Shown here in pieces: positions 2,431 through 61,155 of a stretch of DNA of 64,000 bases (positions are counted from its first letter, which is position 1; the number at the start of each line of letters is the position of its first letter). This DNA comes from Octopus bimaculoides (taxonomy: Eukaryota), in contig NC_068985.1 in the NCBI RefSeq assembly GCF_001194135.2, forward strand, positions 53,769,903 to 53,833,902. The letters run 5' to 3'. The position numbers were made by a program, and so were the translations under genes. The notes under the pieces are model-generated. The model was not told the origin of the DNA, did no database searches, and worked only from the letters and a program-made list of their open reading frames with translations.

Positions 2431-3145
2431 TTCCAAATTTTATTTAATTTGCTTTGCGGGAAGGACTGTTCCAACGAAGTCGTGTATTGTCCTTGCCTTC
2501 GAAACACGGAGTAGATGGAGCAGGGACAACTGATGAAGGGAAATATTCTTNNNNNNNNNNNNNNNNNNNNNNNNNNNNNNNNNNNNNNNNNNNNNNNNNN
2601 NNNNNNNNNNNNNNNNNNNNNNNNNNNNNNNNNNNNNNNNNNNNNNNNNNNNNNNNNNNNNNNNNNNNNNNNNNNNNNNNNNNNNNNNNNNNNNNNNNNN
2701 NNNNNNNNNNNNNNNNNNNNNNNNNNNNNNNNNNNNNNNNNNNNNNNNNNNNNNNNNNNNNNNNNNNNNNNNNNNNNNNNNNNNNNNNNNNNNNNNNNNN
2801 NNNNNNNNNNNNNNNNNNNNNNNNNNNNNNNNNNNNNNNNNNNNNNNNNNNNNNNNNNNNNNNNNNNNNNNNNNNNNNNNNNNNNNNNNNNNNNNNNNNN
2901 NNNNNNATATATATATATATATCATCACATTCATCTTTTAAAATCTATCCTCCTTGCTAGTATGGGATGGATGATTTGTTAGGATCCATTGGGTTTCAGG
3001 ACAGTATTGTACTCCAATGGTACATGCACACACACACACACACACACACCCTTCCAGGGAACCAGGGAAAAGACTGATCAATGGGATTCAAATGTATTTA
3101 ATATGACGTAACTGTCTGTCTGTCTATCAGTCTATCTCTGTGTAT

Positions 3146-3336
3146 ATCATCATCATCATCATCATCATCGTTTAACGTCCGCTTTCCATGCTAGCATGGG
3201 TTGGACGATTTGTCTGAGGACTGGTGAAACCGGATGGCAACACCAGGCTCCAGTCTAATTTGGCAGAGTTTCTACAGCTGGATGCCCTTCCTAACGCCAA
3301 CCACTCAGAGAGTGTAGTGGGTGCTTTTACGTGTCA
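3146..3336 (-). mobile_element. RTE-type tail repeat ending ...GGAAAGCGGACGTTAAACG(ATG)n
   Basis: Near-identical to 7134-7330(-) and 18575-18795(+). The short-tandem tail is typical of RTE-clade elements and their SINEs. Confidence 0.7.
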
Positions 3337-3982
3337 NNNNNNNNNNNNNNNNNNNNNNNNNNNNNNNNNNNNNNNNNNNNNNNNNNNNNNNNNNNNNNNN
3401 NNNNNNNNNNNNNNNNNNNNNNNNNNNNNNNNNNNNNNNNNNNNNNNNNNNNNNNNNNNNNNNNNNNNNNNNNNNNNNNNNNNNNNNNNNNNNNNNNNNN
3501 NNNNNNNNNNNNNNNNNNNNNNNNNNNNNNNNNNNNNNNNNNNNNNNNNNNNNNNNNNNNNNNNNNNNNNNNNNNNNNNNNNNNNNNNNNNNNNNNNNNN
3601 NNNNNNNNNNNNNNNNNNNNNNNNNNNNNNNNNNNNNNNNNNNNNNNNNNNNNNNNNNNNNNNNNNNNNNNNNNNNNNNNNNNNNNNNNNNNNNNNNNNN
3701 NNNNNNNNNNNNNNNNNNNNNNNNNNNNNNNNNNNNNNNNNNNNNNNNNNNNNNNNNNNNNNNNNNNNNNNNNNNNNNNNNNNNNNNNNNNNNNNNNNNN
3801 NNNNNNNNNNNNNNNNNNNNNNNNNNNNNNNNNNNNNNNNNNNNNNNNNNNNNNNNNNNNNNNNNNNNNNNNNNNNNNNNNNNNNNNNNNNNNNNNNNNN
3901 NNNNNNNNNNNNNNNNNNNNNNNNNNNNNNNNNNNNNNNNNNNNNNNNNNNNNNNNNNNNNNNNNNNNNNNNNNNNNNNNNN

Positions 3983-7133: not shown

Positions 7134-7570
7134 ACATCATCATCATCTTCGTTTAACGTCTGCTTTCCATGCTAGCATGGGTTGGACGATTTTACTGAGG
7201 ACTGGTGAAACCAGATGGCTACACCAGGCTCCAATCTGATTTGGCAGAGTTTCTACAGCTGGATGCCCTTCCTAATGCCAACCACTCCGAGAGTGTAGTG
7301 GGTGCTTTTTATGTGTCACCGGCACAAAGGCCAGTCAGGCAGTACTGGCAATGGTCACGCTCAAAATTGGTGTATTTTATGTGCCACCTACAGAAGAGCC
7401 AGTCCAGGGGCTCTCGCTTGAAAGTCCTTACACATGCCACAGGCACAAGTGCCAGAAAGGCGACGCTGGACATAGGTGCCGTCACGATTTTGCTTTTGCT
7501 TGCCCCAACAGGTCTTTGCAAGCTGAGTTTCGTGTCCAATGAAGAAGACGACGTTGGCATGGGTGCCAGT
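7134..7570 (-). mobile_element. RTE-tail repeat, longer copy
   Basis: (CAT)n tail at 7134-7147. High identity to 3146-3336 and 18575-18795. Confidence 0.75.
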
Positions 7571-9675
7571 CTTACATTTGTTCAAATCCCAAAGAATCCT
7601 TTTCAACACGTGGCTTATGATCAGAGATCCGCATATTGTCAGCCACTTTGTAACATGCTCAAGTGGTTAAGGTCAAGCAACTGACAAGCAAATCTGTGGT
7701 ACTGAGTAGAATATTTGCTATAATGATATTTCTGAAATTCAGCAACTCAACTGAATCTGTCTGAAGTGTAATGAAAAATAGGTCAGTTTCAAAACATTAT
7801 TGTTCAGGTCACAAAAGCAAAGTTTGAAGGGAATAATAGTCATTTCCTTTGATTTCTAGATAAAAGCAAATAGAAAATAACACTTACTGACCAAAAACGA
7901 AAAAAAAAATGTTAAATGTTCACTGCCTTGCTGAATATTGTCAGCAAACATTTCATTAATATATTATGAATAATTTCAAAATGCTCGCTTCATTTTTCTA
8001 ATAATTGCTTAAATGCTGGTCACTTTTGCTGTTGAATATGCATAAATCTCTTTTAATTTACTATGTCAATTAAAATATGGATATTAATGAAATATGGATC
8101 TTTTTTTTATCTTCTTTTACTTGTTTCAGTCATTGGATTTCAGCCATGCTGTGGCACTACTGCAAAGTGTTTAGTTGAGTAGATCAACCCCAGTACCTAC
8201 TTTTTAAGTCTGGTACTTATTCTATCAGTCTCTCTTGATGAACCACTTAGTTCCAGGAATGTAAACAAACCAACAGCAGTTGGCAAGAAGAGGGATGGTA
8301 GACAAACATACACATATGTATACACAGTTTCCATCTACCAGATTCACTCACAGGGTATTGGTTGGCCTAGGGCAATAGCAAAAGATATTTGTATGAGGTG
8401 CCACACAGTAGGACTGAACCCAAAACCATGAGATTGCAAAGCTTCTGAATCATACAACCATGACTGCTCCTATAAGGATGCTATTTAAATGTTTACCAAA
8501 TGATTTGATCTTTATCCTTTATGGCTATAGTGATAGAACTCATATTAGACAGCTGCTGCTTCTTATCACCTTCTTTAGGAGACAAACACAACACTATATT
8601 ACTATGAAGATTTTCACATGTTGTTATACACTGCTGGTTGCAATGCACTTCCTTGCAATGTTATAGCTTTTGAATGAAGCCACTTTGCTGGATACGCAGG
8701 GAGGCCAATATTCCTCATGAATGGAATGTCAGTCAATTACGTGGTTATCCATTTACAGCTGAGTAGACTGATGCAACATTCAATGATGTTTTGCTCAAGA
8801 ACACAATGCCCTTCTGGTCTGGGAATCAAAATTACAATTTTGTGATTGTGTGTGTGTCACCCTAACCACTAAGCAACACACCATCATCATATATATGATA
8901 AGGGTTATTATTCAGGGATCTGAGTGTAGGAAGTTTGTAAGCTTCAAGCAGTGAGTGGTAGGTATAAGACTGAAGATTCTTCTCAATTCTGCATTTTTAT
9001 GTGTGTATGTATGTGTTAATTTATGAGAGATAAAGAGATTACATACTGTTTGTCTTAGAGAAATTCATAAATTAACATATACAAGACTCCACTTAATTCC
9101 CCCACTACAATTTAATATGAAGAGATAACAAGAGTTATCTCCCCATGGTACCTAATTATAGATAATGGGACAGAGTCAGAGACACAGAAAAGTCTTGTTG
9201 ATGTGTTATGACCTAGAGATGCTTATTCAGCCAGCATAAAGGGGTGTTCCAAAAATAGAGTAGCATTTGAAGATATTTTACATAAAAATCTTGATAGACA
9301 AATGAGACATAGGATTTGGGGTGGGTGGGGGGTTCCTTACCACCTACAGCACTTCATTGTCTTGAATTCTTCTGTCTATATTCTCTTTCTCTCTCTCTTT
9401 CTTTCTCCTGTGAATTTAGAATTATTATTATTGCTGTTGTTGTTCTTGGTATAATAAATGTTGCTGGCAGTCTGTAAGAAGAAATACTTAGTAGCATTTC
9501 TTTTGGCTCTTTATATTCTGAGTTCAAATCCTGCTAAGGTCAACTTTGCATTTCATCCTTTTGAGATTGATAAAATAAGTACCATTTGAGAACTGGAGTC
9601 AATGTTATCAACTACTCTCTTCTAGAATTGCTGGCTTTATGCCTAAAGAAGAAGGAATCGTTACTATTATTATTG

Positions 9676-12218: not shown

Positions 12219-12262
<44 letters not shown>

Positions 12263-12475
12263 CCTTTCTATTATAGGCACAAGGCCTGAAAATTGGGGGA
12301 TGGGGATAGTTGATTACATCGATCCCAGTACTCAACTGGTATTTCATTTATCGACCATGAAAGGATGAAAGGCAAAGTCGACCTCAGTGGAGTTTGAACT
12401 CACAACGTAGTGATGGGCAAAATATTGCTATAAACATTTCGTCCAGCATGCTAAAGATTTTGCCAGCTCACCACC

Positions 12476-12477
<2 letters not shown>
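12263..12477 (-). mobile_element. tRNA-derived SINE embedded in (AAT)n
   Basis: Reverse complement of the 10184-10360 family, with (AAT)n on both sides. Confidence 0.85.
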
Positions 12478-12512
<35 letters not shown>

Positions 12513-12884
12513 TAATAATAATGATAATAATAATAATAATAATAATAATGATGATGATAATAATGACAACAACAACAACAATAAAGTAATTACTTTTTCC
12601 ATAGAGTATTGATGAATATTTGATATACAGTCTACATTAGTTCTTCCTCAGTTGTAATAGTAGTAGCTTGAGTAGTACTGGTGATGGTAGTAGTAACAGT
12701 GCTTTGTGTAGTGGTGGTGGTGGTATAGGTGACAGAAATTGTGATAGTCGTGGTGGTGGTAGTAGTAATAATAGTATTGGTGGTGGGAGTAGAGGGTAGC
12801 AGGGTGATGTAAATGGTGTTAAAAGAAATGAAGAACCAGTTCATGAAACTCTTCTTTTTTTGTCTTCTTCTTCTCTCCCATTAG

Positions 12885-19805: not shown

Positions 19806-19894
19806 TNNNNNNNNNNNNNNNNNNNNNNNNNNNNNNNNNNNNNTATATATATATATATATGTATGTATTAGAAAAGAATATGTTTTTCTAACAG

Positions 19895-21325: not shown

Positions 21326-23049
21326 TCCTTTCTCTCACTATATGTCTGTCTCTTTGTTTGTCTAAACATGGAAGACTTCCAAGATGCATCCATACATAGC
21401 TACATGCTTACATACATGTATGTATGATAGAAGTCAGCTCAATAATGAGTATTACCATCTTTTGTTAATGAGCTGCAAAGCAAAGATTACTTTTTAATCC
21501 AGCTGATGTTGTGCAGCTTTTGCTAAAACTATTACATAAATGTCTCTTCTCGGTTAAATGCCATACAGAATCATGACAACTGACATTGTGTACAGTCATA
21601 TGTCTCTTCAGACCATGAAATCAAAGGACATTTACATTTTACATGATTTGCTGGCACATATAGACATACATATACAGTTTTGTATTATACCCAAACAATC
21701 ACATGCACACACATNNNNNNNNNNNNNNNNNNNNNNNNNNNNNNNNNNNNNNNNNNNNNNNNNNNNNNNNNNNNNNNNNNNNNNNNNNNNNNNNNNNNNN
21801 NNNNNNNNNNNNNNAAGAAGCCCGTCGTATATATGTATATATATGTGTGTCTGTGTTTGTCCCCATAGCATTACTTGACAACCGATGCCAGTGTGTTTAT
21901 GTGCCCGTAACTTAGCGGTTCGGCAAAAGAGACCGACAGAATAAGTACTAGGCTTACAAAGAATAAGTCCTGGGGTCGATTTGCTCGACTAAAGGCGGTG
22001 CTTCAGTATGGCCGCAGTCAAATGACTGAAACAAGTAAAAGAGTAAGAGTAAAGAGTTAAATTCTAGAACTACAATCAGAAGAAGATCAAAATGCCGAAG
22101 AGAACCTGACACAGCACGAACGAACAAGCAAAAGAGGGAAATGTACAGTTACATAAATACGACATTAACATCAAAAAATATCGAAGTAAACATAGACATC
22201 TCGTCATCGGCTGCTCTACTCTAACAAATATATAAAAATTCAATGTCTATAACCAACCAGCAATAAGAAATTATTTGAGTCCGCAGCTTAGTAAACGAAA
22301 TGAAACTGACATTAAATTGGCGTTTATTAAACGAGTCTGTTTATTGCTATTAAACGGAATTAAATAAGACAAAAACCATGTTCTAATCTTTTACCTTTTA
22401 CTTGTTTCAGTAATTTTACTGCGGCCATGCTGGGGCACCGCCTTGAACTAGTGTTATACATTAAAGAAAAAATAACAAAAATGGCGAGTAACGTAAAAAA
22501 AAATCCTATAACCATAATCGTAGTTCCAGCTTTACTCATAAGTTGCATGCACAAGATGATCTTGCTGAAGTAGTTGAACTCAGAAGACAAAATACAGCTT
22601 TTTGCTATACTTAGAGATGTAGATAATAAAAAGACTAGGGAGATAAACATGTATACCATTAACCCCCCTTCAAACACTGAGAAACTCACTTTTCCAACAT
22701 ATGTTAACTAATCAAACCCAGTCAAGCAATACAATCTGTTAATGGTAAAATAATAAACTAAATCCTGTGTGGGTACCTAACTATAAAGTTCCATTTTAAT
22801 GAAGAACTTGTTTTCAAAATTAAAAATAACGTTTCGTGTTGTTTCGAAAATTATTATATATTTTAACATGCAACAGTTACTAAGAACGTTATCCTGGCCA
22901 GACTGGCTTGTCATTTCATCGTCACCAAATTTGGGAGCAATCCACAAGAAAATTTTGTAGTCAAGAAATAAATAATTGCATGAGGTCTCTTAAAAGCTCT
23001 GGATTTTGCCAAACCCTTACAGTTGTTAGGAACATCGGCATTCTTGCAT

Positions 23050-24216: not shown

Positions 24217-25752
24217 ATTACTGGACTAAGTGGAGTAAATGCTTTCGAGCATTCAGTTTTGACTCCCTTCTGATTCGAGTTTTAAACTCTAGGAGCGTTG
24301 ACTTTTCCTTTCTTTGCGTTAAGGTTGATACCATAAATACCAGGTTTTTACTTGAATAATAAAAATGTATGAGCTCGTCATATTGAGAAAGTAGCATTTC
24401 CAATAAAACGCTGATTGAATGACAGAATCTCTATGCGGTCATCTGATTTCCTAAAAATAAAGGTTACATCTCTTCTAAATAAGGCAGGACACAAATAATG
24501 TAATAATAAATACGCCGACTTAGAAAGAAATATAAAGACGGTCACTGTTAGATAGTTTTTTTATCATAGGTCTGTAGGATCAGGTATGACAAAGTTAAAT
24601 ATCATGCCTTAGAGGAATTACCATGAGCTCTGCGAGCCCCTTGTTAGAATGGCTGTTCCAGCGCATCTCTCTCGCTACCCTTCGGGGTAACGCCTTTTCC
24701 ATTTTGACTGCTATAACCATGAGGCGGTCCGAATTACAGGAAATCGAGAGAATGTAAGAATTTCGTATGTCATGTCTGGAGTTGTCTCCCATGCTTGCCG
24801 AAATAATTAAAGTTTATTTGTTTATAATTCGCCATATAATTATTTATAGTTAACTTCTCAATGATCTTTGTATTACATATATTAACACTGACTTAACTAT
24901 TATGTTTTATGCGGACGGTATTTTTGAGTTACGAACTCAATTATATTTTAGAAATGTTACATGATTTATATGAGTCGTGAATGCGTTTGCGTGTATCAAA
25001 AAATAACAAGTACTCGAGTTTCACTTGGTGGTTGATCTCAACTGTAAGGAGAATCAATTACTTCTGAAATACGCACACGCGTGTGTGTGCGCGCGTATAT
25101 ACGAGCTGATATGGGCGTCTCTTCATGGTTACTTGACCTGTTAGAAATAGCAGGATCATCTATCTCAATCAACACCCTACAGTCTTGATAAAGAGAAGCG
25201 CACTTTGGGTAATGTAGTCTCAGGTACATTATGTCTGGAAGATGGGATGGTCACAGATGGAAAACTTTTGATCGAAGATCTGCTGGACTTACAGTAGCCA
25301 ATATCTACAACAACGACAACAACAACAAATACATGTTGAATGTTTGCAGTTTGCTTCTTGTTATTTGCATTTTTTTCTGAGCAACAATGTTTTGAAAATA
25401 ATATTAAATATCAATGAAAATTGACAACTTTACTTAATTCTTCCTATACACAGTAGATAACCTCCAACTGTAGGGGTGTACCCCACGTCACCACACCTCT
25501 CAAATATTTCAGCGAAGTCCTAAAACTTCATGTAATCCTCCCGCCAGTACTTTCTCTCCACACTGCCACGGCCACCAACGCAGCTTAGGGTTATTTCCTA
25601 CAACTCCAGATTTGTGATAAGCAAACTGACTGCAGCAACCAACTGTGAATACACAGGTTAGACAGGTTATCCACAATGTTTTAGGTGAAAAAAAATTAAA
25701 TACCAGATGGTATATTCTTGTAGACAGAGTTTGTGAAGATATCCTACACTAT

Positions 25753-26481
25753 AGGGCTTTCCTATAAGTAGGTTATCTCCCTTGGCTAGGCGGCGCTCCA
25801 TGTAGATAATTAAACTTCCGGAGGCTACCCACGCCATTGTTATTGTTTTACGTCTTATTATGGGTATAACGCAGCTTGATGATTCAGCTATCGAAGTACT
25901 TACTGTGCCTGAGTTAAAGAAATATTTAAGATTATATGGACAGTATGTTACTGGAAGAAAGGCGGACTTGACTGAAAGGTTGAAAGGAATAAAAATTCTG
26001 TCGATGAAGAATGTCAACAAAGTAAATTCATCGGACGATAAGTCTGAAGTATCGGACGATACTTCAGACAGGAATAAGCAGAAGCTTATATCTCCTCTCG
26101 GTGAAGAATTGCCTGATCTAAAGATCTTTGTAAGTTGCCGAATTTCACAGATAATGACATAATTACCTCGTGCTACGGATGAAAGCAAAGCAACAGTTAA
26201 GGAGTGACATATTTTACCACGACAGACACGTACACAGCATCGAATACCACGATGTGAGTGAAAGCTGCTCTCACTGTATTGTCCGGTGTCTGGTAATCCC
26301 TTCGATACCGACATCAAACCAAAAAAAGAATCCTGACCACAGAGTGTGGGTAATTATGTCAAGTGTCACTGGCGATGTGCATTCAGCTGATTGCAACTGT
26401 TAAAGCAAGTCACTGAGCATGCGTACATGTCATACGGGATAGTTCCAATCAGGGGTGGATAACACCTTATAGGAAAGCCCT
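25753..26481 (+). mobile_element. 729-bp TIR-bounded non-autonomous DNA transposon carrying a SAP-SWIM gene fragment (ISL2EU-like; Kolobok not excluded)
   Basis: Perfect 19-bp inverted match TATAGGGCTTTCCTATAAG (25750-68) / CTTATAGGAAAGCCCTATA (26466-84). It reads as AGGG...CCCT with an AT TSD, or GGG...CCC with TATA. Confidence 0.8.
25860..26430 (+). pseudogene. frameshifted SAP-domain + SWIM zinc-finger protein fragment
   Basis: LTVPELKKYLRLYGQYVTGRKADLTERL fits SAP. After frameshifts it reads LPNFTDNDI.NYLV...CLVIPS...HRVWV..SVTGDVHSADCNC..(A)..ACVH, i.e. CxC...CxH. Confidence 0.75.
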
Positions 26482-26590
26482 ATACGACATACTCATGTAA
26501 AGATATTTTACACCGCACCAAATTATATATATATATATTTATATTTTGTAGAATACCAACACATCGGCACTTCTAACTTTGTTTACAAAG

Positions 26591-27450: not shown

Positions 27451-29573
27451 AAAGCGTATTTAATCTCCATTTATAATTTCGTTAACATCTGCCTGAACTG
27501 TTTGTGTACAACATTTGCTTTTTTCNNNNNNNNNNNNNNNNNNNNNNNNNNNNNNNNNNNNNNNNNNNNNNNNNNNNNNNNNNNNNNNNNNNNNNNNNNN
27601 NNNNNNNNNNNNNNNNNNNNNNNNNNNNNNNNNNNNNNNNNNNNNNNNNNNNNNNNNNNNNNNNNNNNNNNNNNNNNNNNNNNNNNNNNNNNNNNNNNNN
27701 NNNNNNNNNNNNNNNNNNNNNNNNNNNNNNNNNNNNNNNNNNNNNNNNNNNNNNNNNNNNNNNNNNNNNNNNNNNNNNNNNNNNNNNNNNNNNNNNNNNN
27801 NNNNNNNNNNNNNNNNNNNNNNNNNNNNNNNNNNNNNNNNNNNNNNNNNNNNNNNNNNNNNNNNNNNNNNNNNNNNNNNNNNNNNNNNNNNNNNNNNNNN
27901 NNNNNNNNNNNNNNNNNNNNNNNNNNNNNNNNNNNNNNNNNNNNNNNNNNNNNNNNNNNNNNNNNNNNNNNNNNNNNNNNNNNNNNNNNNNNNNNNNNNN
28001 NNNNNNNNNNNNNNNNNNNNNNNNATACTTATATATATATGTTTGTATCTGTGTTTGTCCCCTCACCATCGCGTGACAACCGATTTTTGTGTTTACGTCT
28101 CCTTAACTTAGCGGTTCGGAAAAAGAGAACGATAGGATAAGTACTAGGCTTACAAAGAATAAGTCTTGGGGGCGATTTATTCGACTAAAAGGCGGTGCTC
28201 CAGTATGGCCGCAGTCAAATGACTGAAACGAATAAAAGAATACATATATGTATAGAGAGAGAGGGGGGAGAGAGTGAGAGAGAGAAAGGGGGAGAGAGAA
28301 AGGGAGAGAGAGAAAGGGAGAGAGAGAAAGGGAGAGAGTGAGAAACTTTATTCGGTCATAGAAGGTTGAGTTTTTTATTTGTTTCATTATTGATATTGAC
28401 GTAGTACAATAGGTTAAGAACATCGTCCAAAGCATGCATAACTCTGTACAACATTATAATATACGACAAAAAAATACCTATACTTTACCCGGTCATTGGT
28501 ATGGTGCTAGGTAAGTTAGACAGTTGGTAAGGTCGTCTTCATGTAGTTGGTGTAATCGTTTGTTTCTTTACCTCAATATATATATATGTTACAAGAAATA
28601 AATGGCATAACATATAATGTAACAATTACATTTGTATTATATATGTAAGTCTGTTTTATTATATTCGTCATCCCCATGCCAGTGGGAAAACTGTCTTGTC
28701 CGTGGGACAAATAAAGAGGATGGACACCGCTGCTCTAGAATACGTAGAGATGTGTACAAGTACTGGAATATAATAATCTTATCCTGTATGCGTATGTCCT
28801 GCATAACGAATATATAGTGTTTACTCCTGTTGAGCCGTGTTCTACTATAGATGTTGGAAGAAGGGAAAGTCAACCAAACTGACCCCAGTAATTGACTGGT
28901 ACTAAATTTATTGAACTAGGGAGAGATGAAGCGCGAAATCAAACGTTAAAATACCTAAATGGGATCTTTTTTAAAACGGGGGCCACATTTTTCATTAATG
29001 TTTTACGTAGTGTTTTTGGTACGGAAAGACTTTCAAACTTCGTATACTTATCTATTTTGTGTTATAGAACAGAAAAATATTTTTGTATTCGAATTTATTT
29101 CATGTAAAAAATTGTCTTATTTCGATAATTTCAACCAATCACTGACAAGTATTCAGTTGTTTATATTTACTCCTTTGGCTGATTAAGCCATAGCTTCGTT
29201 TTATTTGCTTTTTCATTTTCTTTTTTTTTTCTTCGTTTTATTTGCTTTTTTCTTNNNNNNNNNNNNNNNNNNNNNNNNNNNNNNNNNNNNNNNNNNNNNN
29301 NNNNNNNNNNNNNNNNNNNNNNNNNNNNNNNNNNNNNNNNNNNNNNNNNNNNNNNNNNNNNNNNNNNNNNNNNNNNNNNNNNNNNNNNNNNNNNNNNNNN
29401 NNNNNNNNNNNNNNNNNNNNNNNNNNNNNNNNNNNNNNNNNNNNNNNNNNNNNNNNNNNNNNNNNNNNNNNNNNNNNNNNNNNNNNNNNNNNNNNNNNNN
29501 NNNNNNNNNNNNNNNNNNNNNNNNNNNNNNNNNNNNNNNNNNNNNNNNNNNNNNNNNNNNNNNNNNNNNNNNN

Positions 29574-31782: not shown

Positions 31783-33113
31783 TTGGGTTGGCAACTAAGT
31801 ACCCGCCGTTTTTTTTTCTAATTTTGGAATTTATTGCGTTTTTAAATTTTGGAATCTATTTTTTTCGAGAATTCTATTTTTGAATCATTTTGGAATCTAT
31901 TGTTTGTTTGTTTTTTTTTTTNNNNNNNNNNNNNNNNNNNNNNNNGGGGGGGGGGGTCTAGTTAATTTTAGTTAATTTTTGTTTATTTTCACATCATTAA
32001 AATGGAATGTCAAGTTAAGAAAAACGAGCATTTTCGACACCTTCTTTTTGCTTTTAATCAAGGTTCTAAGGCCGCAAAAGCTGCTCGCGACATTTGTGCT
32101 GTGTATGGAGAGGGTACCATAGCTGAAAGAACCGCTTGTTATTGGTATGTCAAGTTCAAAAATAGAGATTTTGACCTCAAAGACGCACCTCGTTCTGGCC
32201 GTCCAGTTGAGTTCGATGAAGAGCGATTAAACTAATTTTTGCACGAAAATTCTCGTCAAACGACAAGGTAACTGGCTGAGAAAGTGGAATGCTCTCACAC
32301 TGCTATACAGAAGCATCTTCACTCGATGGGAAAAGTTCAGAAGTATAGAGCATAGGTTCCGCATGCTTTAAGTGACAACAAAAATCAACGAATCACAATT
32401 TCCGCTGGTTTGCTTGCTTGTCACCGCTCAACTCATGGACACAAGTAACGATTTCTTTACCGAATCGTTTCTGGCGACGAAAAATAGTGCCTGTACATCA
32501 ATATGAAGCAGCGTAAGGAATGGCTTAGCCTCAGTAAACAAGCGTCACTTCGCGTGAAACAAGATCTTCATCCGCGTAAAACGATGTTGTGCGTATGGTG
32601 GGACTGGGAAGGCATTATCCATTACGAATTGCTTGAACGGAACCAAATGGTCAACGCGGAACTATGTTCAACAGATGAAGCGACTCAACACGGCTATTCA
32701 AGAGAAAAGACCTAATCGGCAGCATGGAGTTCTTCTGCTGCACGACAACGCCCGCCTTCATATCGCCAATATGACCAAGGAAGCCATTCAAACGCATGGC
32801 TGGGAAGTGCTGCCACACCCGCCGTACTCTCCTGATTTGGCACCAACGGATTCCCACTTCTTTCGATCTCTTTCAAATGCTATGCGCGGAGTTTCGGTCA
32901 ATATTGATGCAGAATTGAGAGCTTGGTTGTATCAATTTTTCGAGTCGAAATTGGGTGATTTCTACCAACGAGGTATTGGAAATCTTGTTGAACGTTGGGA
33001 AGAGGTTGTAAACAACAAGGGTGAATACATTATTGATTAATTAGTTATTTTTTATTAAACCTTTTAAAAAATTTAAATTTTTAAAAAACGGTGGGAACTT
33101 AGTTGCCAACCCA
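31783..33113 (+). mobile_element. full-length inactive mariner (D,D34D; mellifera-subfamily-like)
   Basis: TIR TTGGGTTGGCAACTAAGT / ACTTAGTTGCCAACCCA with TA at 31781-82 and 33114-15. Confidence 0.95.
32002..33040 (+). pseudogene. mariner transposase pseudogene
   Basis: HTH region, (W)VPHAL, SGDEK, HDNARLH and YSPDLAPTD with 34 residues between the last two Asp. Several stops and frameshifts. Confidence 0.95.
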
Positions 33114-33740
33114 TAAGGTCAAAAATGTGTAGGGGAAGACGATTGACAATTGACCCCATATCATGACGTTTCTGATATTTTGAGTTATCGACCTTGGAAC
33201 GAGGAAAGGTGAAGATGAATTGAGCAGAATACGAACTCACAAATAGAAAGTTACAGCTAAATACTGTAAGACATTCAATCCACTGATCTACCAATTTTTC
33301 CAATCCATTGAACCATAACTAATAATTATAATAGTAAACGTATTATTGTAATCTGTTTTGTAGTAGGCTTTCTGTATTGATTATGATGTAGAATAAATAC
33401 ATGCATGTTTAATGTATCAAATTTCACAATCATCGACATTGGGATTAGAAAATCAAAAATGTCGGATGACTGTCATCTCGGATCAAGGTTTTTGTTAATC
33501 TTAAACTAGATTAAGACAAACACAACATGAACATAAATAAATAATACAAATAATGAATATTAATAATAAATTATGGTAAATAATACTAATAAGTTAAGCA
33601 GTAGTAGTAGTAGTAAATTTTGACAAATCCTGCAATTTTTAGTGGGAGAAAGGAAGTCGGTTAACTGGTAATTATTTTTATCGACTCTTAAAGTTCCCTC
33701 ACTTGTGCCAAAAGTAGAGATGATGATGATGATGATGATT

Positions 33741-33777
<37 letters not shown>

Positions 33778-33779
33778 AG

Positions 33780-33983
33780 GCGGTGAGCTGGCAGAATCGT
33801 TACCACGCTGGACGAAATGCTTAGTGATATTTCGCTCGTCGCTACGTTCTGAATTCAAATTCCGCCGAGGTTGACTTTGCCTTTCAGAGTCGCTAAACTA
33901 AGTACCTGTGAAACACTGGGGTCGATGTAATCGACTTGTTCCCTCCCCACCAAATTTCAAGCCTTATTCCTTCAGTAGAAAGG

Positions 33984-34025
<42 letters not shown>

Positions 34026-35600
34026 TAGTTTTATTTTCATAACGTGCTTTCACTTCACTACCGAGCGCAGCTCTGTGCGCCTTGGGTATGTGCTGTGGTT
34101 TGCTGTGGTGCTCTTATGGTTACTGTATTGAAAGTGTTTTGCGTAGGATGTGTGCAGTGCCCACTAGTGCAATTTTCTGTATGTTATATATATTTGTAAG
34201 TCCTGGTGTTTTTGTTATGTATTTGTCTGAATATTTTTTTATTATACCTAAGGGTGCCTTAGGTATGATAGGAATTGTTTCTGTTTTTCGATTCCACATT
34301 CGAGTTACCTCTATTTCCAGGTCTTTGTATTTTGAAAGTTTTTCCATTTCTTTTAGAGAAACGTTGTCATCTGCTGGTATTGATACATCAATTGAAAAGC
34401 ATTTTTTTCTTCATGATCTTTGACAACTATATCTGGTCTATTTGCCTATTATTATTATTATCATCATTATTGCCCTCTCCCGCAAAGTTCCAGGCTTTGT
34501 GCTTATAATAGAAAGGATTATTATGAATATAATTAAAAGGGCGGTGAGTTGGCCGAATCATTACTACGCCGAGCAAAATGCTTAGCAGCATTTCATACGT
34601 CTTTAAGTTCTGAGTTCAAATTCCGCTGCTGTCGACTTTGCTTTTCATTCTTTCGGGGTCGATGAAATAAGTACCAGTTGAACACTGGAGTCAGTGTAAT
34701 CGACTCATCCCCTCTCCCAAAATGTCTGCCCTTGTGGCAAAATTTGAAACCGTTATTATAATTATTGAGAAGGTGGCGAGCTGGGAGAATTGTTAGCACG
34801 CCAGACGAAATACTTAGCGGTATTCCGCCGAGGTCGACTTTGCCTTTCCTCCTTTCGGGATAGATAAATTAAGTGTCTGTAAAACACTGAGGTCGATGTA
34901 ACTGACTAGTCCCCTCGCCCAAAATTTCAGGCCTTATGCCTTTAGTAAAAAGGATTATTATTATCATTATTATTATTATTATTATTATTATTAAGATGTC
35001 ACTTGATTGATAGCATTCTCCGCAGTATGTGAGCTGTTCTTAGTCTTATGATTTTCTGGACCACATAAATACTGATGTTGCTCGGGGACACGGTTGTTAA
35101 GTGACATCTTACCTATAGCGTCTCAAGCCCACTTTTGGACTGACCTCTACGAATATGAAGCAGGAAGTACAAAAGAACATCGACAATAACAATAAGAATA
35201 AAACAAGGCCAGCAACTTCAGGAGAGGAGTAAAGTAGATTACATCGGCTCCAGTGCTCAAATGGTACTTATTTTATCGACCCCGAAATGAAGAAAGTCAA
35301 ACTCAACCTCGACGGAATTTGAACTCAGAATTTAAAGACGGACGAAATACCGCTAAGCATTTCATCCGGTGTGCTAACGATTCCGCCAGCTCGCCGCCCT
35401 TAGTAATAACAATTTTCCGATTTTAGTACAGAGTCAACAGTTTCGAGGTGTGGGGGAGAGTCGATTACATCTACACCGGTACTTGACTGGTAATTTATCG
35501 ATACCAAAAGGATGAAAGGTAAAGTTTACCTCGGTGAGATTTGAGCTCAGAACGTATTGTACCGGAAGAACACTGCAAGGTATTTTTCAGACACCAACGA
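33780..35600. mobile_element. stack of ~5 TAA-associated SINE copies around an R4/Dong fragment
   Basis: + copies at ~33780, 34540 and 34772; - copies at ~35215 and 35415. Separated mostly by (ATT)n/(AAT)n. Confidence 0.8.
34022..34445 (-). mobile_element. 5'-truncated R4/Dong-like LINE 3' end (RLE domain)
   Basis: EKLSKYKDLEIEVTRMWN..TETIPII...LGII...IQKIALVGTAHILRKTLS*, flanked by (TAA)n on both sides. Same family as 59581-59990. Confidence 0.85.
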
Positions 35601-35733: not shown

Positions 35734-35874
35734 TGAATCTCCAGTATTTTTGCTCTTTTATATTTTTACANNNNNNNNNNNNNNNNNNNNNNNNNNNNNN
35801 NNNNNNNNNNNNNNNNNNNNNNNNNNNNNNNNNNNNNNNNNNNNNNNNNNNNNNNNNNNNNNNNNNNNNNNNNN

Positions 35875-35908: not shown

Positions 35909-37085
35909 TTTTCTTTTTTCTCTTTTTCTTATTTCCAGAGTATGTTTATAATTACAATTATTTACTATCTTCGTTATGGACATTTAATAACAATGACAAC
36001 TGTAGCAATGCTTCATTACCTAACTCGAACGGACAAATAACAGCAGGATCGCTCAAATTCAAGATCTTTAACGAGACACCACTTTATGTATGAATGTACC
36101 TGATGTGACCCAGACTGCAAAATGGCTGCAATACAACATGATACATAGAACCTCACCCATAAGGAATAATAGCAGGATGGGTAGAGACGATCGTCATGCA
36201 AAATAAAGACTACCATCAAATCCATCTTCTGTTTACTTAATCAATTATTATTATTTCAACTAACACTGCGGAATTCCTGAAGTAGATCCAACGGAAATAT
36301 ACCCCAACTGCGGATGACACCAAGTAGCCCAAACCGTGCCAGTGTTTTACTCAACATATCAACACACTAATCGACATATACCCATTAGTCCAAAATATTA
36401 TATATATATATATATACACANNNNNNNNNNNNNNNNNNNNNNNNNNNNNNNNNNNNNNNNNNNNNNNNNNNNNNNNNNNNNNNNNNNNNNNNNNNNNNNN
36501 NNNNNNNNNNNNNNNNNNNNNNNNNNNNNNNNNNNNNNNNNNNNNNNNNNNNNNNNNNNNNNNNNNNNNNNNNNNNNNNNNNNNNNNNNNNNNNNNNNNN
36601 NNNNNNNNNNNNNNNNNNNNNNNNNNNNNNNNNNNNNNNNNNNNNNNNNNNNNNNNNNNNNNNNNNNNNNNNNNNNNNNNNNNNNNNNNNNNNNNNNNNN
36701 NNNNNNNNNNNNNNNNNNNNNNNNNNNNNNNNNNNNNNNNNNNNNNNNNNNNNNNNNNNNNNNNNNNNNNNNNNNNNNNNNNNNNNNNNNNNNNNNNNNN
36801 NNNNNNNNNNNNNNNNNNNNNNNNNNNNNNNNNNNNNNNNNNNNNNNNNNNNNNNNNNNNNNNNNNNNNNNNNNNNNNNNNNNNNNNNNNNNNNNNNNNN
36901 NNNNNNNNNNNNNNNNNNNNNNNNNNNNNNNNNNNNNNNNNNNNNNNNNNNNNNNNNNNNNNNNNNNNNNNNNNNNNNNNNNNNNNNNNNNNNTTAAACG
37001 TATATATGTATGTTCATCTATACGTATATATATTTACATACATACATATTTACATATATACATACATATATACACACACACACAC

Positions 37086-42700: not shown

Positions 42701-44095
42701 TTGTGAAACGGGGTCGCCTAGTAAACTATTCTAGCGGCCCCAGGAATTTGAAGCTCCTGCTCCTAAATTATTGCGGATTAAAAGAGGTTCCAGTCAACCC
42801 GTGTCGGGAGAGTTGTTGTAAAACCACTGGCTCAGCGATAGACTGTTTATTCTATATCCTCCTTCTCCCGCTACTACCACGGTCACTGTTCCTCTATCTA
42901 TATAACTCATTACTCAAACATTCCCATGCGATATGCTCGTCTCAGTGAAGGAACGGCGCTCAGTGGTTACGATATTCGACTCATGATCATAAGTTCAATT
43001 CCTGATGATGTGTTGTGTCATTGAGCAAAACACTTAATTTTTTCACGTTGCTCCAGTCCACTCAGCTGGCAAAAAGAGTTGTACATATAACTCAATGGGC
43101 AGGCTGATTTAGAGACCAGCTTTTCTCTTTTGGAAAGAAATTTGTAAAATATAACCAGAATAATATACACATATTAACATATACAGGAAGCTATATTATT
43201 TTATCGAAGTGAAATAATTATATTATCTTTATGTCTTTGGTTAAGCTTGCTGTCTTTTAATCATAGAGTCCTTAACATTTGTATGTAGCTGTTATTTCCA
43301 TCTATTTGGATGTCATCAGTATGATGTGGTTTGGAATCTAGCGTCTATTAAACATTGCATACAATTAAATTTTTTAACTTTACAAAAGAAAGGGACATAA
43401 GAAAATTATATAATGAAGTCATTTCTGTTCATAATTCATTAACAGTGTAAAAAGAGAGAGGAAGAGAGAAATAGAGAAAGAAGTAAACTTAGTATGAAAT
43501 TTACTTATTCAGAACAATCCAACTCATGACTAAGTAGTGTNNNNNNNNNNNNNNNNNNNNNNNNNNNNNNNNNNNNNNNNNNNNNNNNNNNNNNNNNNNN
43601 NNNNNNNNNNNNNNNNNNNNNNNNNNNNNNNNNNNNNNNNNNNNNNNNNNNNNNNNNNNNNNNNNNNNNNNNNNNNNNNNNNNNNNNNNNNNNNNNNNNN
43701 NNNNNNNNNNNNNNNNNNNNNNNNNNNNNNNNNNNNNNNNNNNNNNNNNNNNNNNNNNNNNNNNNNNNNNNNNNNNNNNNNNNNNNNNNNNNNNNNNNNN
43801 NNNNNNNNNNNNNNNNNNNNNNNNNNNNNNNNNNNNNNNNNNNNNNNNNNNNNNNNNNNNNNNNNNNNNNNNNNNNNNNNNNNNNNNNNNNNNNNNNNNN
43901 NNNNNNNNNNNNNNNNNNNNNNNNNNNNNNNNNNNNNNNNNNNNNNNNNNNNNNNNNNNNNNNNNNNNNNNNNNNNNNNNNNNNNNNNNNNNNNNNNNNN
44001 NNNNNNNNNNNNNNNNNNNNNNNNNNNNNNGTAAGCTCGACGCTCTAACCACTGAGCCATGCGCCTTCACACACACACACCCACATATATATATG

Positions 44096-49199: not shown

Positions 49200-51070
49200 A
49201 GACCTAAAATTTGAGGGAGGGAGATAGACGGTTAAATCGACTCCAGTACATGGCTGGTCGACTCTGAAAAGAAGAATAATAAAGCTGACCGCGACAGGAT
49301 TTCAACTCAGAAAGAAGGGAACCGCAACAATACTGCAAAGCGTTTTATCAAAGTTAACGATTCTGCCAGTCTATCGCCCTAAAGTAATGCAACAATAATA
49401 ATAGCAATTTTTCTACTATGAGTACAAAGCCTGAAATCTAAGGGGGTAGGCAAGTCGATTAACTGAACCCAGTACTCAACTGGCGTTTAATTTACCTTCA
49501 TGATCTGAGCAAAATGCTTAGCAACATTTCGTTTGCTTTTATATTCCGAGTTCGAATTCCGCCGAGCTCGACTTTGTTTTCCATCCGTTCGAGGTTGAAA
49601 AATAAATACCATTTAAGCACTGAGTGAGTGAATCGATGTAATCGACTCGTTCCCTCCCCTAAAATTTCAAACCTTTGTGCCTATAGTAAAAAAATAATAA
49701 TAATAATAACTATTCATAACACAGGCACAAAGATCTGAAATTTGTAAGGGGCGTTAGTTTATCACATGAACTTACTGGAAAAGATGAAAAATAAAGCTGA
49801 CTTTAACTCCAATGACCAACTGGTACTGATTTTACGAACCCCGAAAGGATGAACAGCAAAGTCGATCACGGTGGTATTTGAACTCAGAACATAAAGAGAC
49901 AGAAGAAATGTCACTTTATATTTTTCCCGACGCTCTAATTATTCCTTCGGCTCGTAATAAAAATCATTGTTACCATTTTAGGCACAAGACCAGTTTTGAG
50001 GGGAGTGGGTCAGTCGATACAATCAACTAAAATACTCGACTAATACTTTATTTTATCGATGCCGAAAGAACGAAAGATAATTTTGACCTCGGCGGGATTT
50101 GAACACTGAACTTATGGAGCCAGAAGAAATACCGCCTAGCATTTTGTCCGACTCGCTAACGATTCTAATAGGTCACTGCTTTAATAATAATAATGGTTTT
50201 CACATTTTGTCACAAGACCAGCAATTTTATGGGTGGACTAAATCGATTACATCGACACTAGTAATCGATTGGAACTTTATTTTATCGATCCTGGAAAGAT
50301 GAAAGGAAAAGTCGATTTTAGCGGGATTTGAACTCAGAAAGTGAAGAGCGAGTTCGCCGCCTTAATAATAGTCCTTTCTACTAGATGCACCAAGGATTGA
50401 AATTTTGGGGGAGGGGTTTAGTCGTTTATATCGGCCCTAATTTTTGACTGGTACTTAATTTATCGATCCCGAAAAGATGAAAGGTTAAGTCGATCTCAGT
50501 GGAATTTGAACTCAGAACGTAAAGACGGACAAAATGCTTAGCAGCATAGCGTTTGAAGTCAGAACGTGAAAACGAACGAAATGCTGCGAAGCATTTTGTC
50601 CGGCGTGCTAACGATTCTCCCAGCTCGCCTACTTAATAATAATAATAATGGTTTTAAATTTTGGCGCAAGACCAGCAGTTCCGGAGTAGGGGCTAAGTCG
50701 ATTACATCGCTCCTGTGCTCAACTGGTATTTAATTTATCGATCCCAAAAAGATGAAAGGTAAAGTCAACCTTCGTGGAATTTGAACTCAGAACGTAAAGA
50801 CGAACGAAATACCGCTAAGCATTTTCTACTATGGGCCCAAGGCATGAAATTTTGCTGATGGGTGTATACTCAAGTAGCACTTTACTTTATCGACCCCGAA
50901 AGGATGAAAAGTTAAGTCGACCTCAACAAAATTTGGAATAATAAGCTACTCTCAATTTCTGTAATGAATACTACGGTCCGCTACTATATCAACTGTAAAA
51001 CTTGAACTCAGAACGTAGAGAATCGTAGCTAAATACAGAGGGCTCTCGCTGTAGTGGTTCTGCTAGTCTC
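49200..51070 (-). mobile_element. head-to-tail pile-up of ~8 TAA-associated SINE copies or fragments (mostly minus)
   Basis: Repeated GAATTTGAACTCAGAAC (reverse B-box) and CGAAAGGATGAAAG blocks separated by (AAT)n remnants. One + copy at ~49505-49690. Confidence 0.8.
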
Positions 51071-53950: not shown

Positions 53951-54699
53951 AATATATATCATTATTATTATCACCATCGTCGTCGTTTTTGTTGTCGTTG
54001 TTGTTAAAACAGAAGCGTTAGCGAGCTGTCAGAATCGTTAGCACGCCGTACAAAATGCTTAACGGCATTTCGTTTGACTTTACATTCTGAGTTCAAATTC
54101 CGCCGAGGTCGACTTTACCTTTCATTCTTTCAGGGATAATAAAATAAGTGCCAGTCAAGTACTGGAGTCGATGAAATAGACTAGCTCCTTCTCACAAAAT
54201 TTCAGGCTTTGTGCCTATTATTATTATTATTATTATTAAGTGAGAGAGCAGTGCATACCATCAAAGTGACATTGGGAAATAAATATACGAAGCCCATTAT
54301 ACCCATCATAACAACCCATCTGATAAGGGTACACCAGGTACATACATTACAGCAATATGTGCACAACATGGTGATCTCATATCAAGATAAACTACACATG
54401 ACCTTGAAGGTGGGGTTCAATTATAATTTTCTTAAGGTCAAGTAGCCCATCCTGCTCAGAAAGTCCCTGAATAAGATTTCGCTTAAGGATGATGAACGAA
54501 ACCCCCATGAGAATTCCGGTGAACACATGGCTATGATACTCCACCACTACTTCTGCTTGTGGTCAGAGATGCACATATCATCAGCTACCAAGGGACATGC
54601 TCAACTGGTTAAGGTCAAACAACTAACAAGCAGATCTGTGGTATTGAGCAGAATATTTGTTGTAGTCCATCTTTTACAGCAAGACAAAACTTTATTATT

Positions 54700-57189: not shown

Positions 57190-58030
57190 GATGATGATGA
57201 TTCGAAATGCTTAGCGGTATTTTGCCCGTCGCTACATTCTCAGTTCAAATTCTGCCGAGGTCGACTTTGCTCTTCATCCTTTCGGAGTCGATAAATTAAG
57301 TACCAGTGAAACACNNNNNNNNNNNNNNNNNNNNNNNNNNNNNNNNNNNNNNNNNNNNNNNNNNNNNNNNNNNNNNNNNNNNNNNNNNNNNNNNNNNNNN
57401 NNNNNNNNNNNNNNNNNNNNNNNNNNNNNNNNNNNNNNNNNNNNNNNNNNNNNNNNNNNNNNNNNNNNNNNNNNNNNNNNNNNNNNNNNNNNNNNNNNNN
57501 NNNNNNNNNNNNNNNNNNNNNNNNNNNNNNNNNNNNNNNNNNNNNNNNNNNNNNNNNNNNNNNNNNNNNNNNNNNNNNNNNNNNNNNNNNNNNNNNNNNN
57601 NNNNNNNNNNNNNNNNNNNNNNNNNNNNNNNNNNNNNNNNNNNNNNNNNNNNNNNNNNNNNNNNNNNNNNNNNNNNNNNNNNNNNNNNNNNNNNNNNNNN
57701 NNNNNNNNNNNNNNNNNNNNNNNNNNNNNNNNNNNNNNNNNNNNNNNNNNNNNNNNNNNNNNNNNNNNNNNNNNNNNNNNNNNNNNNNNNNNNNNNNNNN
57801 NNNNNNNNNNNNNNNNNNNNNNNNNNNNNNNNNNNNNNNNNNNNNNNNNNNNNNNNNNNNNNNNNNNNNNNNNNNNNNNNNNNNNNNNNNNNNNNNNNNN
57901 NNNNNNNNNNNNNNNNNNNNNNNNNNNNNNNNNNNNNNNNNNNNNNNNNNNNNNNNNNNNNNNNNNNNNNNNNNNNNNNNNNNNNNNNNNNNNNNNNNNN
58001 NNNNNNNNNNNNNNNNNNNNNNNNNNNNNC

Positions 58031-61107: not shown

Positions 61108-61110
<3 letters not shown>
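59581..61110 (-). mobile_element. R4/Dong-like LINE with internal deletion
   Basis: DYRKAFDSIPH...RRGIFRGDSLSPLLF is joined directly to TEGFLITAQDQ...CRICGDGKETINHIISGC. (TAA)n at both ends. Confidence 0.9.

Positions 61111-61155
<45 letters not shown>

What the first reader, a model, noticed from the sequence alone, without database searches (positions are those of the whole stretch)
25750..26484. 729-bp mini-transposon that kept a promoter plus SAP-SWIM cargo but no transposase
Seen: perfect 19-bp terminal inverted match with an AT (or TATA) duplication. Inside are ACTTCCGG (ETS-like, 25814-21) and CGCCATT (YY1-like, 25832-38), then an ATG at 25860 opening a 100-aa ORF with an intact SAP motif. 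A frameshifted continuation ends in a SWIM CxC...CxH just before the right TIR. Established: ISL2EU (and some Kolobok) elements carry an accessory gene whose YqaJ/lambda-type exonuclease follows a SWIM finger. Inference: this is a deletion derivative that lost both nuclease and transposase and may still express a stand-alone DNA-binding SAP mini-protein, a possible regulator or domestication substrate. The superfamily assignment is from memory.
Basis: partly seen in the sequence, partly recalled or inferred. Interest (0 to 1): 0.7.

Follow-up and report, generated by a model that had tools for sequence, protein, structure and literature searches.

The report
Octopus non-autonomous ISL2EU DNA transposon
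This is a 729-bp internally deleted copy of an ISL2EU cut-and-paste DNA transposon in an octopus genome: it keeps both ends and the first third of the element's accessory nuclease gene, which makes it an ordinary hitch-hiker element and not a new kind of system.

Summary
The inverted repeat is real: 19 bp, perfect, at 25750-25768 and 26466-26484. Read against relatives, the element proper is 25753-26481 (729 bp), flanked by a 2-bp AT duplication.

Its left 650 bp are collinear with the left end of fuller relatives. That end holds the TIR, a conserved 108-nt leader and the SAP and half-SWIM part of a SAP-SWIM-YqaJ gene.

Its last ~82 bp match the transposase-side end of autonomous relatives in two bivalves (Mya arenaria, Sinanodonta woodiana). 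There the SAP-SWIM-YqaJ gene faces a THAP-HTH-DDE_Tnp_4 transposase between similar TIRs with AT duplications. This is the published definition of ISL2EU.

At least 25 Octopus bimaculoides predicted "SAP domain-containing proteins" are copies of the same mini-element. They share its frameshift and its deletion junction, so it spread as a mini-element.

One correction: only the CxC half of the SWIM finger is present.

In the only test possible here the SAP ORF looks neutral. An octopus transposase was not found.

This is an ordinary feature of low interest.

The parts
25751..25752 (.). Left copy of the 2-bp target-site duplication (AT).
   Evidence: AT|AGGGC...GCCCT|AT in the window. The same register gives AT in 6 of 7 Mya copies and in Sinanodonta. 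The palindromic TATA context makes TA or TATA formally possible in the window alone.
25753..25790 (+). Left (ORF2-side) terminal inverted repeat. The core is AGGGCTTTCCTATAAG (25753-25768, perfect), with an imperfect extension to about 25790.
   Evidence: The core CTTTCC.ATAA is shared with L001, Sinanodonta and Mya termini.
25791..25859 (+). Conserved subterminal leader, either a promoter/5'UTR or protein-binding sites. It holds TAGGCGGCGCT, ACTTCCGG (25814-21) and CGCCATT (25832-38).
   Evidence: The leader is 79% identical to L001 and 73% to the bivalve element, while 53-61% of synonymous sites differ. ACTTCCG is invariant in four elements. Promoter function is inferred, not shown.
25860..26162 (+). 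100-aa ORF. It is the N-terminal SAP domain (residues 13-42) and linker of the ISL2EU second gene, ended early by a frameshift.
   Evidence: Pfam SAP 25.4 bits against a cut-off of 23.9. It is collinear with L001 residues 1-81. The same ORF is the family consensus in O. bimaculoides (P0011, P0012).
26030..26068 (+). Imperfect 21-bp tandem duplication inside the linker. It carries the 15-nt insertion relative to L001 and creates a 13-nt palindrome.
   Evidence: It is present in the family consensus (SSDDKSEVSDDTSD).
26118..26161 (+). Disrupted stretch. A 25-bp deletion lies after 26118 and a 4-bp deletion after 26160, relative to the intact relative. These two frameshifts separate the SAP ORF from the SWIM half.
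   Evidence: The 25-bp deletion is shared by O. bimaculoides copies (LPDLKIFVSCRISQIM in P0001, P0003, P0011, P0012). GTAAGT at 26130 is not a real splice site: L001 reads straight through.
26158..26400 (+). Pre-SWIM region and first half of the SWIM finger (ending ADCNC). It is out of frame with the SAP ORF.
   Evidence: 87.7% amino-acid identity to L001 residues 105-185, dN/dS 0.05, and 83% identity to the octopus long copy P0021.
26399..26401 (.). Junction of the internal deletion. It lies 9 nt before the end of exon 1 of ORF2 and joins to a point about 82 nt from the right terminus.
   Evidence: Homology to L001 stops at 26399. Homology to transposase-side ends runs from about 26401 to the terminus. 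The same junction is read through in P0003 and P0018.
26402..26444 (-). Transposase-side subterminal region. It holds the GCATGCG box (26417-26423) and AGTTCCAAT.
   Evidence: The box has the same spacing from the terminus as GCGCATGCGC in L011 and GCATGCGC in Sinanodonta.
26445..26481 (-). Right (transposase-side) terminal inverted repeat. The core is CTTATAGGAAAGCCCT (26466-26481).
26482..26483 (.). Right copy of the AT target-site duplication.

Best explanation
The feature is one copy of a young, multi-copy, non-autonomous ISL2EU (PHIS superfamily) DNA transposon of an octopus genome.

An autonomous ISL2EU element carries two inward-facing genes between short TIRs. At one end is a SAP-SWIM-YqaJ exonuclease gene. 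At the other is a THAP-HTH-DDE_Tnp_4 transposase.

A single internal deletion removed everything from 9 nt before the end of exon 1 of the exonuclease gene to about 82 nt from the transposase-side terminus. What is left is both TIRs, both subterminal regions (the right one truncated), the 5' leader and the first ~540 bp of the exonuclease gene. That gene remnant also carries a family-wide 25-bp frameshifting deletion.

The remnant has no enzyme of its own. It moves, or moved, only when a transposase made elsewhere binds its ends, cuts it out and inserts it at an AT dinucleotide, which is duplicated.

Shown: the anatomy, the homology to both ends, the family membership, the multi-copy state and the shared junction.

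Inferred: trans-mobilisation by a DDE transposase, and promoter activity of the leader.

The 100-aa SAP ORF is most likely a passive leftover.
For: 1. TIRs and AT duplication.
2. Left 650 bp: 74% identical and collinear with L001. That contig starts at the TIR and runs through SAP, SWIM and an intron into a YqaJ domain (PF09588, E = 9.6e-20).
3. Mya arenaria: eight loci hold a 6.48-kb element more than 99.9% identical between copies. Most show a SAP-SWIM-YqaJ gene (581 aa) convergent with a THAP+HTH_Tnp_4+DDE_Tnp_4 gene (521 aa in the intact copies). The TIR is TGTCCTTTCCGATAAC, and AT is duplicated in 6 of 7 copies.
4. Sinanodonta woodiana: the same two genes lie between AT|AGGGCATTCCAATAAG ... 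CTTATTGGAATGCCCT|AT.
5. The window's last ~82 bp align with the transposase-side ends of Sinanodonta, Mya and L011, including the TIR, CCCCT.ATTGGAACT and the GCATGCG box at equal spacing.
6. Literature: ISL2EU is defined by AT TSDs, a DDE/HTH/THAP transposase and a second ORF with a YqaJ domain (PMC4482050; PMC4122938).
7. Multi-copy: 20 protein clusters, about 30 sequences, all but one from O. bimaculoides, 50-95% identical to the window. About 25 sequences are of the window's type. Most of these end at ADCNC, the stop created by the junction, and P0003 and P0018 read through the junction into the right TIR.
8. An octopus long copy of the second gene with YqaJ exists (P0021/P0023). It is 83% identical to the window over the shared part.
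9. dN/dS against L001 is 0.22 for SAP and 0.05 for the SWIM half, at dS of about 1. The coding sequence was therefore functional through most of its history, in autonomous ancestors.
Against: - No transposase gene is in the window.
- No octopus-named transposase is among the 120 hits listed out of 1,947. A source of transposase in this genome is therefore not shown.
- Copy evidence in octopus comes from predicted proteins only. No second DNA copy, and so no independent TSD or empty site, could be read.
- The bases outside the AT are T...A, not the A...T preference reported for ISL2EU. The Mya copies show A or T on either side.
- In the window alone the TSD register is ambiguous (AT, TA or TATA).
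Confidence: 0.92

Rival explanations
1. The mini-element family is kept, or some copy has been co-opted, because its own promoter expresses the 100-aa SAP protein. This protein would act as a DNA-binding regulator. One model is a competitor of the full-length SAP-SWIM-YqaJ protein at element ends, analogous to the KP repressor encoded by internally deleted P elements.
For: - An intact ATG-to-stop ORF with a SAP domain above Pfam's cut-off is present.
- The same 100-aa ORF is the family consensus and is intact in at least P0011, P0012 and the window.
- The leader, with its invariant ACTTCCG box, is retained.
Against: - Residue divergence from the family consensus is the same in the SAP domain (9/432, 2.1%), the tail (10/365, 2.7%) and the SWIM half that is out of frame and cannot be part of the mini-protein (20/833, 2.4%). 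That is the neutral expectation.
- The family is young, about 1% nucleotide divergence by inference, so intact ORFs are expected by default.
- The window copy has changed residues 2 and 4.
- No expression data could be obtained.
- Counts are small, and gene models are biased toward open frames.
Confidence: 0.06
2. It is a one-off relic. A full-length element inserted here and was deleted in place, so the 729-bp form was never itself mobile.
For: Only one DNA copy could be inspected directly. Internal deletions of resident DNA transposons are common (general knowledge).
Against: - Many O. bimaculoides predicted proteins end at the junction-created stop after ADCNC.
- Two of them (P0003, P0018) continue through the identical junction sequence (KSLSMRTCHTGEFQSGV.NTL) into the right TIR.
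- The 25-bp frameshift deletion is shared as well.
- Independent identical deletions are very unlikely.
Confidence: 0.02

Closest known systems
ISL2EU (IS4EU) group of the PHIS (PIF/Harbinger-ISL2EU-Spy) superfamily of eukaryotic DDE transposons
   Same: - A 2-bp AT target duplication and short TIRs.
- Autonomous relatives carry a THAP-HTH-DDE_Tnp_4 transposase plus a second gene with a YqaJ exonuclease domain (PMC4482050, PMC4122938).
- The window element is collinear with both ends of such elements.
   Different: - The window copy has neither enzyme.
- The TIR starts AGGG, not the 'usually GG' reported.
- The bases outside the AT are T/A, not A/T.
- The octopus transposase partner was not found here.
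- The published survey listed ISL2EU in 14 animal species. No paper in the held library names ISL2EU together with octopus.
Deletion-derivative non-autonomous DNA transposons of the sister group PIF/Harbinger (for example mPing derived from Ping; recalled from general knowledge)
   Same: An internal deletion of an autonomous two-gene element keeps the TIRs and subterminal sequence and is amplified by transposase supplied in trans.
   Different: - PIF/Harbinger makes 3-bp TWA duplications, and its second gene is Myb/SANT-like.
- This element retains a translatable 5' piece of the second gene, whereas typical MITEs have no coding capacity.
KP element of Drosophila P transposons (recalled from general knowledge; analogy only)
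   Same: An internally deleted element that still encodes only an N-terminal DNA-binding domain of an element protein.
   Different: - KP encodes the transposase's own THAP domain and is a demonstrated repressor.
- Here the remnant is the SAP domain of the accessory nuclease.
- No activity or selection is shown.

Membership tests
ISL2EU (PHIS superfamily) | 2-bp target-site duplication, typically AT | tested here: met
   The window has AT at 25751-52 and 26482-83. The register was fixed by homologous termini: Mya has AT in 6 of 7 copies and Sinanodonta has AT/AT. The definition is from PMC4482050 and PMC4122938. Within the window alone TA or TATA cannot be excluded.
ISL2EU (PHIS superfamily) | Terminal inverted repeats homologous to those of elements that carry the ISL2EU transposase | tested here: met
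   The core AGGGCTTTCCTATAAG compares with Sinanodonta AGGGCATTCCAATAAG, Mya TGTCCTTTCCGATAAC and L001 AGCACTTTCCGATAAG.
ISL2EU (PHIS superfamily) | Transposase with THAP + HTH + DDE (DDE_Tnp_4) domains in the autonomous form | tested here: inconclusive
   This is met in relatives. In Mya: THAP 4.3e-08, HTH_Tnp_4 1.9e-15, DDE_Tnp_4 3.4e-42. It also holds in Sinanodonta and L011. No transposase is in the window, and none labelled octopus is among the 120 listed of 1,947 hits.
ISL2EU (PHIS superfamily) | [quoted passage not shown] | tested here: met
   The window holds the 5' third of this gene. It is collinear with L001, which continues into YqaJ (PF09588, 9.6e-20). The octopus long copy P0021 has YqaJ at 8.9e-21. 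The window copy itself lacks the YqaJ part.
ISL2EU (PHIS superfamily) | Target context A|AT|T and TIRs usually starting with GG (reported tendencies, not strict) | tested here: not met
   The window has T-AT...AT-A, and its TIR starts AGGG. Mya copies have A or T on either side, and their TIR starts TGTCC. These are tendencies reported in PMC4482050, not defining rules.
Non-autonomous (deletion-derivative) transposon family | Several copies sharing the same internal deletion junction | tested here: met
   About 25 O. bimaculoides protein sequences are of the window type. Most end at the junction-created stop, and P0003 and P0018 read through the same junction into the right TIR. This is protein-level evidence only. 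DNA copies could not be fetched.
SAP domain (PF02037) | Profile match above Pfam's gathering score | tested here: met
   25.4 bits against 23.9, residues 13-42 of the 100-aa ORF.
SWIM zinc finger (PF04434) | Complete CxCxnCxH signature or a profile match | tested here: not met
   There is no Pfam hit in the window. Only CNC is present. In relatives the CxH half lies beyond a conserved intron and is deleted here. The apparent CVH is the GCATGCG box of the other end. The full-length relative P0022 has CSCTAGLGEACNH and scores 17.5 bits, below the 19.6 cut-off.
Kolobok | TTAA target-site duplication | tested here: not met
   The flanks are ..CACTAT|A...T|ATACG.., with no TTAA. The TTAA rule is recalled from general knowledge.

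The most novel reading that the evidence does not exclude
The mini-element family is more than a passive hitch-hiker. One reading is that its retained leader drives a 100-aa SAP protein that competes with the full-length SAP-SWIM-YqaJ protein at ISL2EU ends, as a KP-like self-repressor. Another is that the retained sense leader and the truncated transposase-side promoter region give convergent transcripts that seed small-RNA silencing of the autonomous elements. Either would give a first functional handle on the unexplained second gene of ISL2EU.
Probability: 0.06. Interest if true: 0.5.

Novelty: new member of a known kind. Interest (0 to 1): 0.15.

Why it matters
The value is mostly for annotation.

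- About two dozen UniProt entries of Octopus bimaculoides named "SAP domain-containing protein" (for example A0A0L8IGG2, A0A0L8HYP1, A0A0L8HXV9) are fragments of this transposon family, not host genes. Their predicted introns, such as the GTAAGT at 26130, are artefacts of frameshifts.

- The comparison shows a conserved layout of ISL2EU ends across mollusc elements. On the nuclease-gene side this is TIR, then an ACTTCCG box, then the gene. On the transposase side it is TIR, then CCCCT.ATTGGAACT, then GCGCATGCGC, then ACTTCCG, then the gene. An intron also splits the SWIM finger at the same codon in all of them. These are concrete candidates for the promoters or protein-binding sites of a transposon group whose second gene has no known function.

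None of this would surprise a transposon specialist.

Tried and rejected
1. Intron hypothesis. GTAAGT at 26130 and CAG at 26196 would splice the SAP ORF in frame to the SWIM half, and several O. bimaculoides gene models do something similar. I rejected it because L001 and P0006 read straight through this stretch as coding sequence. The window simply lacks 25 + 4 bp.

2. The 'CxH' as the second half of SWIM. Rejected; see the observation check.

4. DNA of other octopus copies. The window's 100-aa ORF and P0023 are not on record in the contig index. The O. bimaculoides proteins are UniRef-only, so there was no DNA-level copy count, TSD logo or dN/dS among copies.

5. Octopus transposase. A profile search with the two bivalve transposases gave 1,947 hits. 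None of the 120 listed is labelled octopus. This is inconclusive, not negative.

6. P0141 / L011 as a possible cephalopod full-length element. It is an autonomous relative, useful for the end alignment. Its second gene is only 45% identical to L001, so it is not the octopus parent.

7. Empty site. The joined flanks have no paralogue in the window.

8. Transposase or further copies in the window. None found.

9. The antisense 216-aa ORF (25667-26317, minus strand). It has no Pfam hit, and I treat it as the shadow of the sense coding region.
Full report
**What is in the sequence**

The window is a gap-rich, repeat-rich, 34.5% G+C animal sequence.

At 25750-25768 and 26466-26484 lies a perfect 19-nt inverted repeat. 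It continues imperfectly to about 38 nt on each side.

An ATG at 25860 opens a 100-aa ORF ending at 26162. The N-terminus of that ORF matches the Pfam SAP domain above the curated cut-off (25.4 bits against 23.9).

Downstream, in another frame, an open stretch ends in ...HSADCNC followed by a stop at 26401-26403.

**What it is related to**

A protein search with the conceptual SAP + SWIM-half translation returned 20 clusters, about 30 sequences.
- All but one are short Octopus bimaculoides predictions of 93-182 aa, mostly named "SAP domain-containing protein", 50-95% identical to the window.
- The window is therefore from an octopus, and the sequence is multi-copy there.
- The remaining hit, P0006, comes from a 1,990-nt Logan contig, L001.

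L001 begins exactly at a homologous terminus, AGCACTTTCCGATAAG. It runs through an undisrupted SAP and pre-SWIM reading frame to CNCTAG. After a 250-nt GT-AG intron it continues as QGEACNH... into a YqaJ/lambda-exonuclease-type domain (PF09588, E = 9.6e-20; also Viral_alk_exo).

The window element is collinear with L001 from 25757 to 26399 at 74% identity. It differs by a 15-nt insertion (part of a small tandem duplication at 26030-26068), a 25-bp deletion after 26118 and a 4-bp deletion after 26160.

My first idea, an intron from GTAAGT at 26130, was wrong, because L001 codes straight through that stretch.

**The autonomous form**

Full-length homologues of the L001 protein (565-620 aa, SAP + SWIM + YqaJ) are common in molluscs. 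They also occur in amphioxus, corals and ticks.

In Mya arenaria:
- The 581-aa gene lies in a 6.48-kb unit present at eight fetched loci at more than 99.9% identity.
- In the intact copies it is convergent with a 521-aa gene carrying THAP, HTH_Tnp_4 and DDE_Tnp_4 domains.
- The unit ends in TGTCCTTTCCGATAAC... / ...GTTATCGGAAAGGACA.
- It is flanked by AT on both sides in 6 of 7 copies.

In Sinanodonta woodiana the same gene pair lies between AT|AGGGCATTCCAATAAG and CTTATTGGAATGCCCT|AT. These termini are almost the octopus ones.

This matches the published definition of the ISL2EU group of the PHIS superfamily: AT duplications, a DDE/HTH/THAP transposase, and a second ORF with a YqaJ exonuclease domain of unknown role (PMC4482050; PMC4122938).

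Applying the same register to the window gives:
- TSD AT at 25751-52 and 26482-83;

**The right end and the SWIM claim**

The last ~82 bp of the window element (26401-26481) do not belong to the nuclease gene. They align with the transposase-side ends of Sinanodonta, Mya and a further autonomous relative, L011. The shared layout is TIR, then CCCCT.ATTGGAACT, then a GCGCATGCGC-like box about 60 nt from the tip.

In the three autonomous elements an inverted ACTTCCG box and the transposase ATG follow. In the window the alignment switches at that point into the reverse complement of the CNC codons.

So one deletion joined a point 9 nt before the end of exon 1 of the nuclease gene to a point about 82 nt from the far terminus.

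The true CxH half lies beyond an intron that sits at the same codon in L001, Sinanodonta and Mya, and it is deleted here. Only half a SWIM finger remains, and Pfam SWIM does not hit.

**It spread as a mini-element**

Most O. bimaculoides proteins of the window's type end at ADCNC, the stop that the junction creates.
- P0003 and P0018 read through the identical junction sequence into the right TIR (...KSLSMRTCHTGEFQSGV.NTL...).
- P0001, P0003, P0011 and P0012 carry the same post-frameshift tail, LPDLKIFVSCRISQIM.
- The founder therefore already had both the internal deletion and the 25-bp frameshift.

A longer octopus copy of the second gene, with the 25 bp intact and a YqaJ domain, also exists: P0021/P0023, the latter being XP_014784938.1. 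It is 83% identical to the window over the shared part.

I did not find an octopus transposase. None of the 120 hits listed out of 1,947 carries an octopus label, which is inconclusive.

**Selection**

Against L001, dS is about 1, and dN/dS is 0.22 for the SAP part and 0.05 for the SWIM half. The gene was under purifying selection through most of the divergence, that is, inside autonomous ancestors.

The 108-nt non-coding leader is 79% identical to L001 and 73% to the bivalve element, while 53-61% of synonymous sites differ. ACTTCCG is invariant in all four aligned left ends.

The leader is therefore functional cis sequence. It could be a promoter, a protein-binding site, or both. The data cannot separate these.

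Among the octopus copies, residue divergence from the consensus is:

| Region | Differences | Share |
|---|---|---|
| SAP domain | 9/432 | 2.1% |
| Tail of the 100-aa ORF | 10/365 | 2.7% |
| Untranslatable SWIM half | 20/833 | 2.4% |

There is no sign that the mini-protein is constrained. The low divergence points to a young family, in which intact ORFs are expected by default. The counts are small and come from gene models, so this is weak evidence.

**Mechanism**

- Shown: a two-ended, enzyme-less derivative of an ISL2EU element, present in many copies with one shared junction.
- Inferred from the family's established biology: mobilisation in trans by a THAP-HTH-DDE_Tnp_4 transposase that recognises the TIR and subterminal sequence, with insertion at AT and a 2-bp duplication.
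- Inferred: the leader can still start transcription into the SAP ORF.

**Verdict**

The "SWIM CxC...CxH" is only half right. The regulator or domestication idea has no support so far.

This is a new, apparently unnamed member of a well-described kind, and interest is low. Its practical use is to flag about two dozen O. bimaculoides "SAP domain-containing protein" entries as transposon fragments. It also points to conserved boxes at ISL2EU ends for anyone studying this group.

Noticed in passing
window 32633-33040 (+): A 135-aa ORF that looks like the C-terminal part of a mariner/Tc1-type transposase (LLHDNARLH...PYSPDLAPTD). Its Pfam DDE_3 score of 28.3 bits is just under the 28.6 cut-off. 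Probably a decayed mariner-like copy.
   Followed up: partly
window 55715-56437 (-): A 240-aa ORF with a reverse-transcriptase domain (RVT_1, E = 4.8e-12). It is a fragment of a non-LTR retrotransposon next to an N gap.
   Followed up: partly
window, many places, e.g. 12224-12549, 33720-34447, 34488-34995, 50126-50925, 54023-54240, 61106-61638: A 250-450-bp interspersed repeat occurs in both orientations at 67-93% identity (98 self-matches of 150 bp or more). It accounts for most of the 929 inverted-repeat pairs. It looks like a SINE-type family and was not classified.
   Followed up: no
window 3224-3340 and 7205-7684 (+): Two ORFs start with nearly the same peptide (MKPDG.TRLQS.LAEFLQLDALPNANHSESVVGAF). 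The longer one has no Pfam hit. Probably another repeat family.
   Followed up: no
window 2551-2906, 3337-3982, 19807-19843, 21715-21814, 27526-28024, 29255-29573, 31922-31945, 35771-35874, 36421-36993, 43541-44030, 57315-58029: Eleven runs of N (3,863 bases in all), mostly bordered by microsatellites (TA, CA, CT). This is a draft assembly with gaps at simple repeats.
   Followed up: no
P0009, P0013, P0015, P0020 (O. bimaculoides proteins): A second, more diverged subfamily (50-57% identical to the window). It has a short deletion inside the SAP motif (MNIKQLELKNYLRLHGQYVTG). Three of the four read CNCTAGKE.., that is, into the start of the SWIM intron. Possibly older decayed copies, or a different deletion derivative of the same ISL2EU lineage.
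   Followed up: no
P0019 (O. bimaculoides A0A0L8HQJ3): A gene model that fuses an unrelated lysine- and glutamate-rich N-terminus to the element's SWIM half (HVHSIEYHD...ADCNC). This could be an annotation chimera or an exonised element piece.
   Followed up: no
L003 9913-22559 (Mya arenaria CP111013.1): Two copies of the 6.48-kb autonomous ISL2EU lie head to tail, overlapping by about 3 bases at the joint. Together with the more than 99.9% identity among eight loci, this suggests very recent or ongoing activity in Mya.
   Followed up: partly
P0248: An ISL2EU-type transposase cluster (530 aa, 43 member sequences) whose precomputed Pfam list includes a SAP domain as well as THAP, HTH_Tnp_4 and DDE_Tnp_4. 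In that lineage SAP appears to sit on the transposase itself.
   Followed up: no
P0119, P0131, P0134: Proteins of 757-883 aa that combine the YqaJ domain with PF20700. In these lineages the same nuclease module appears fused to another domain.
   Followed up: no
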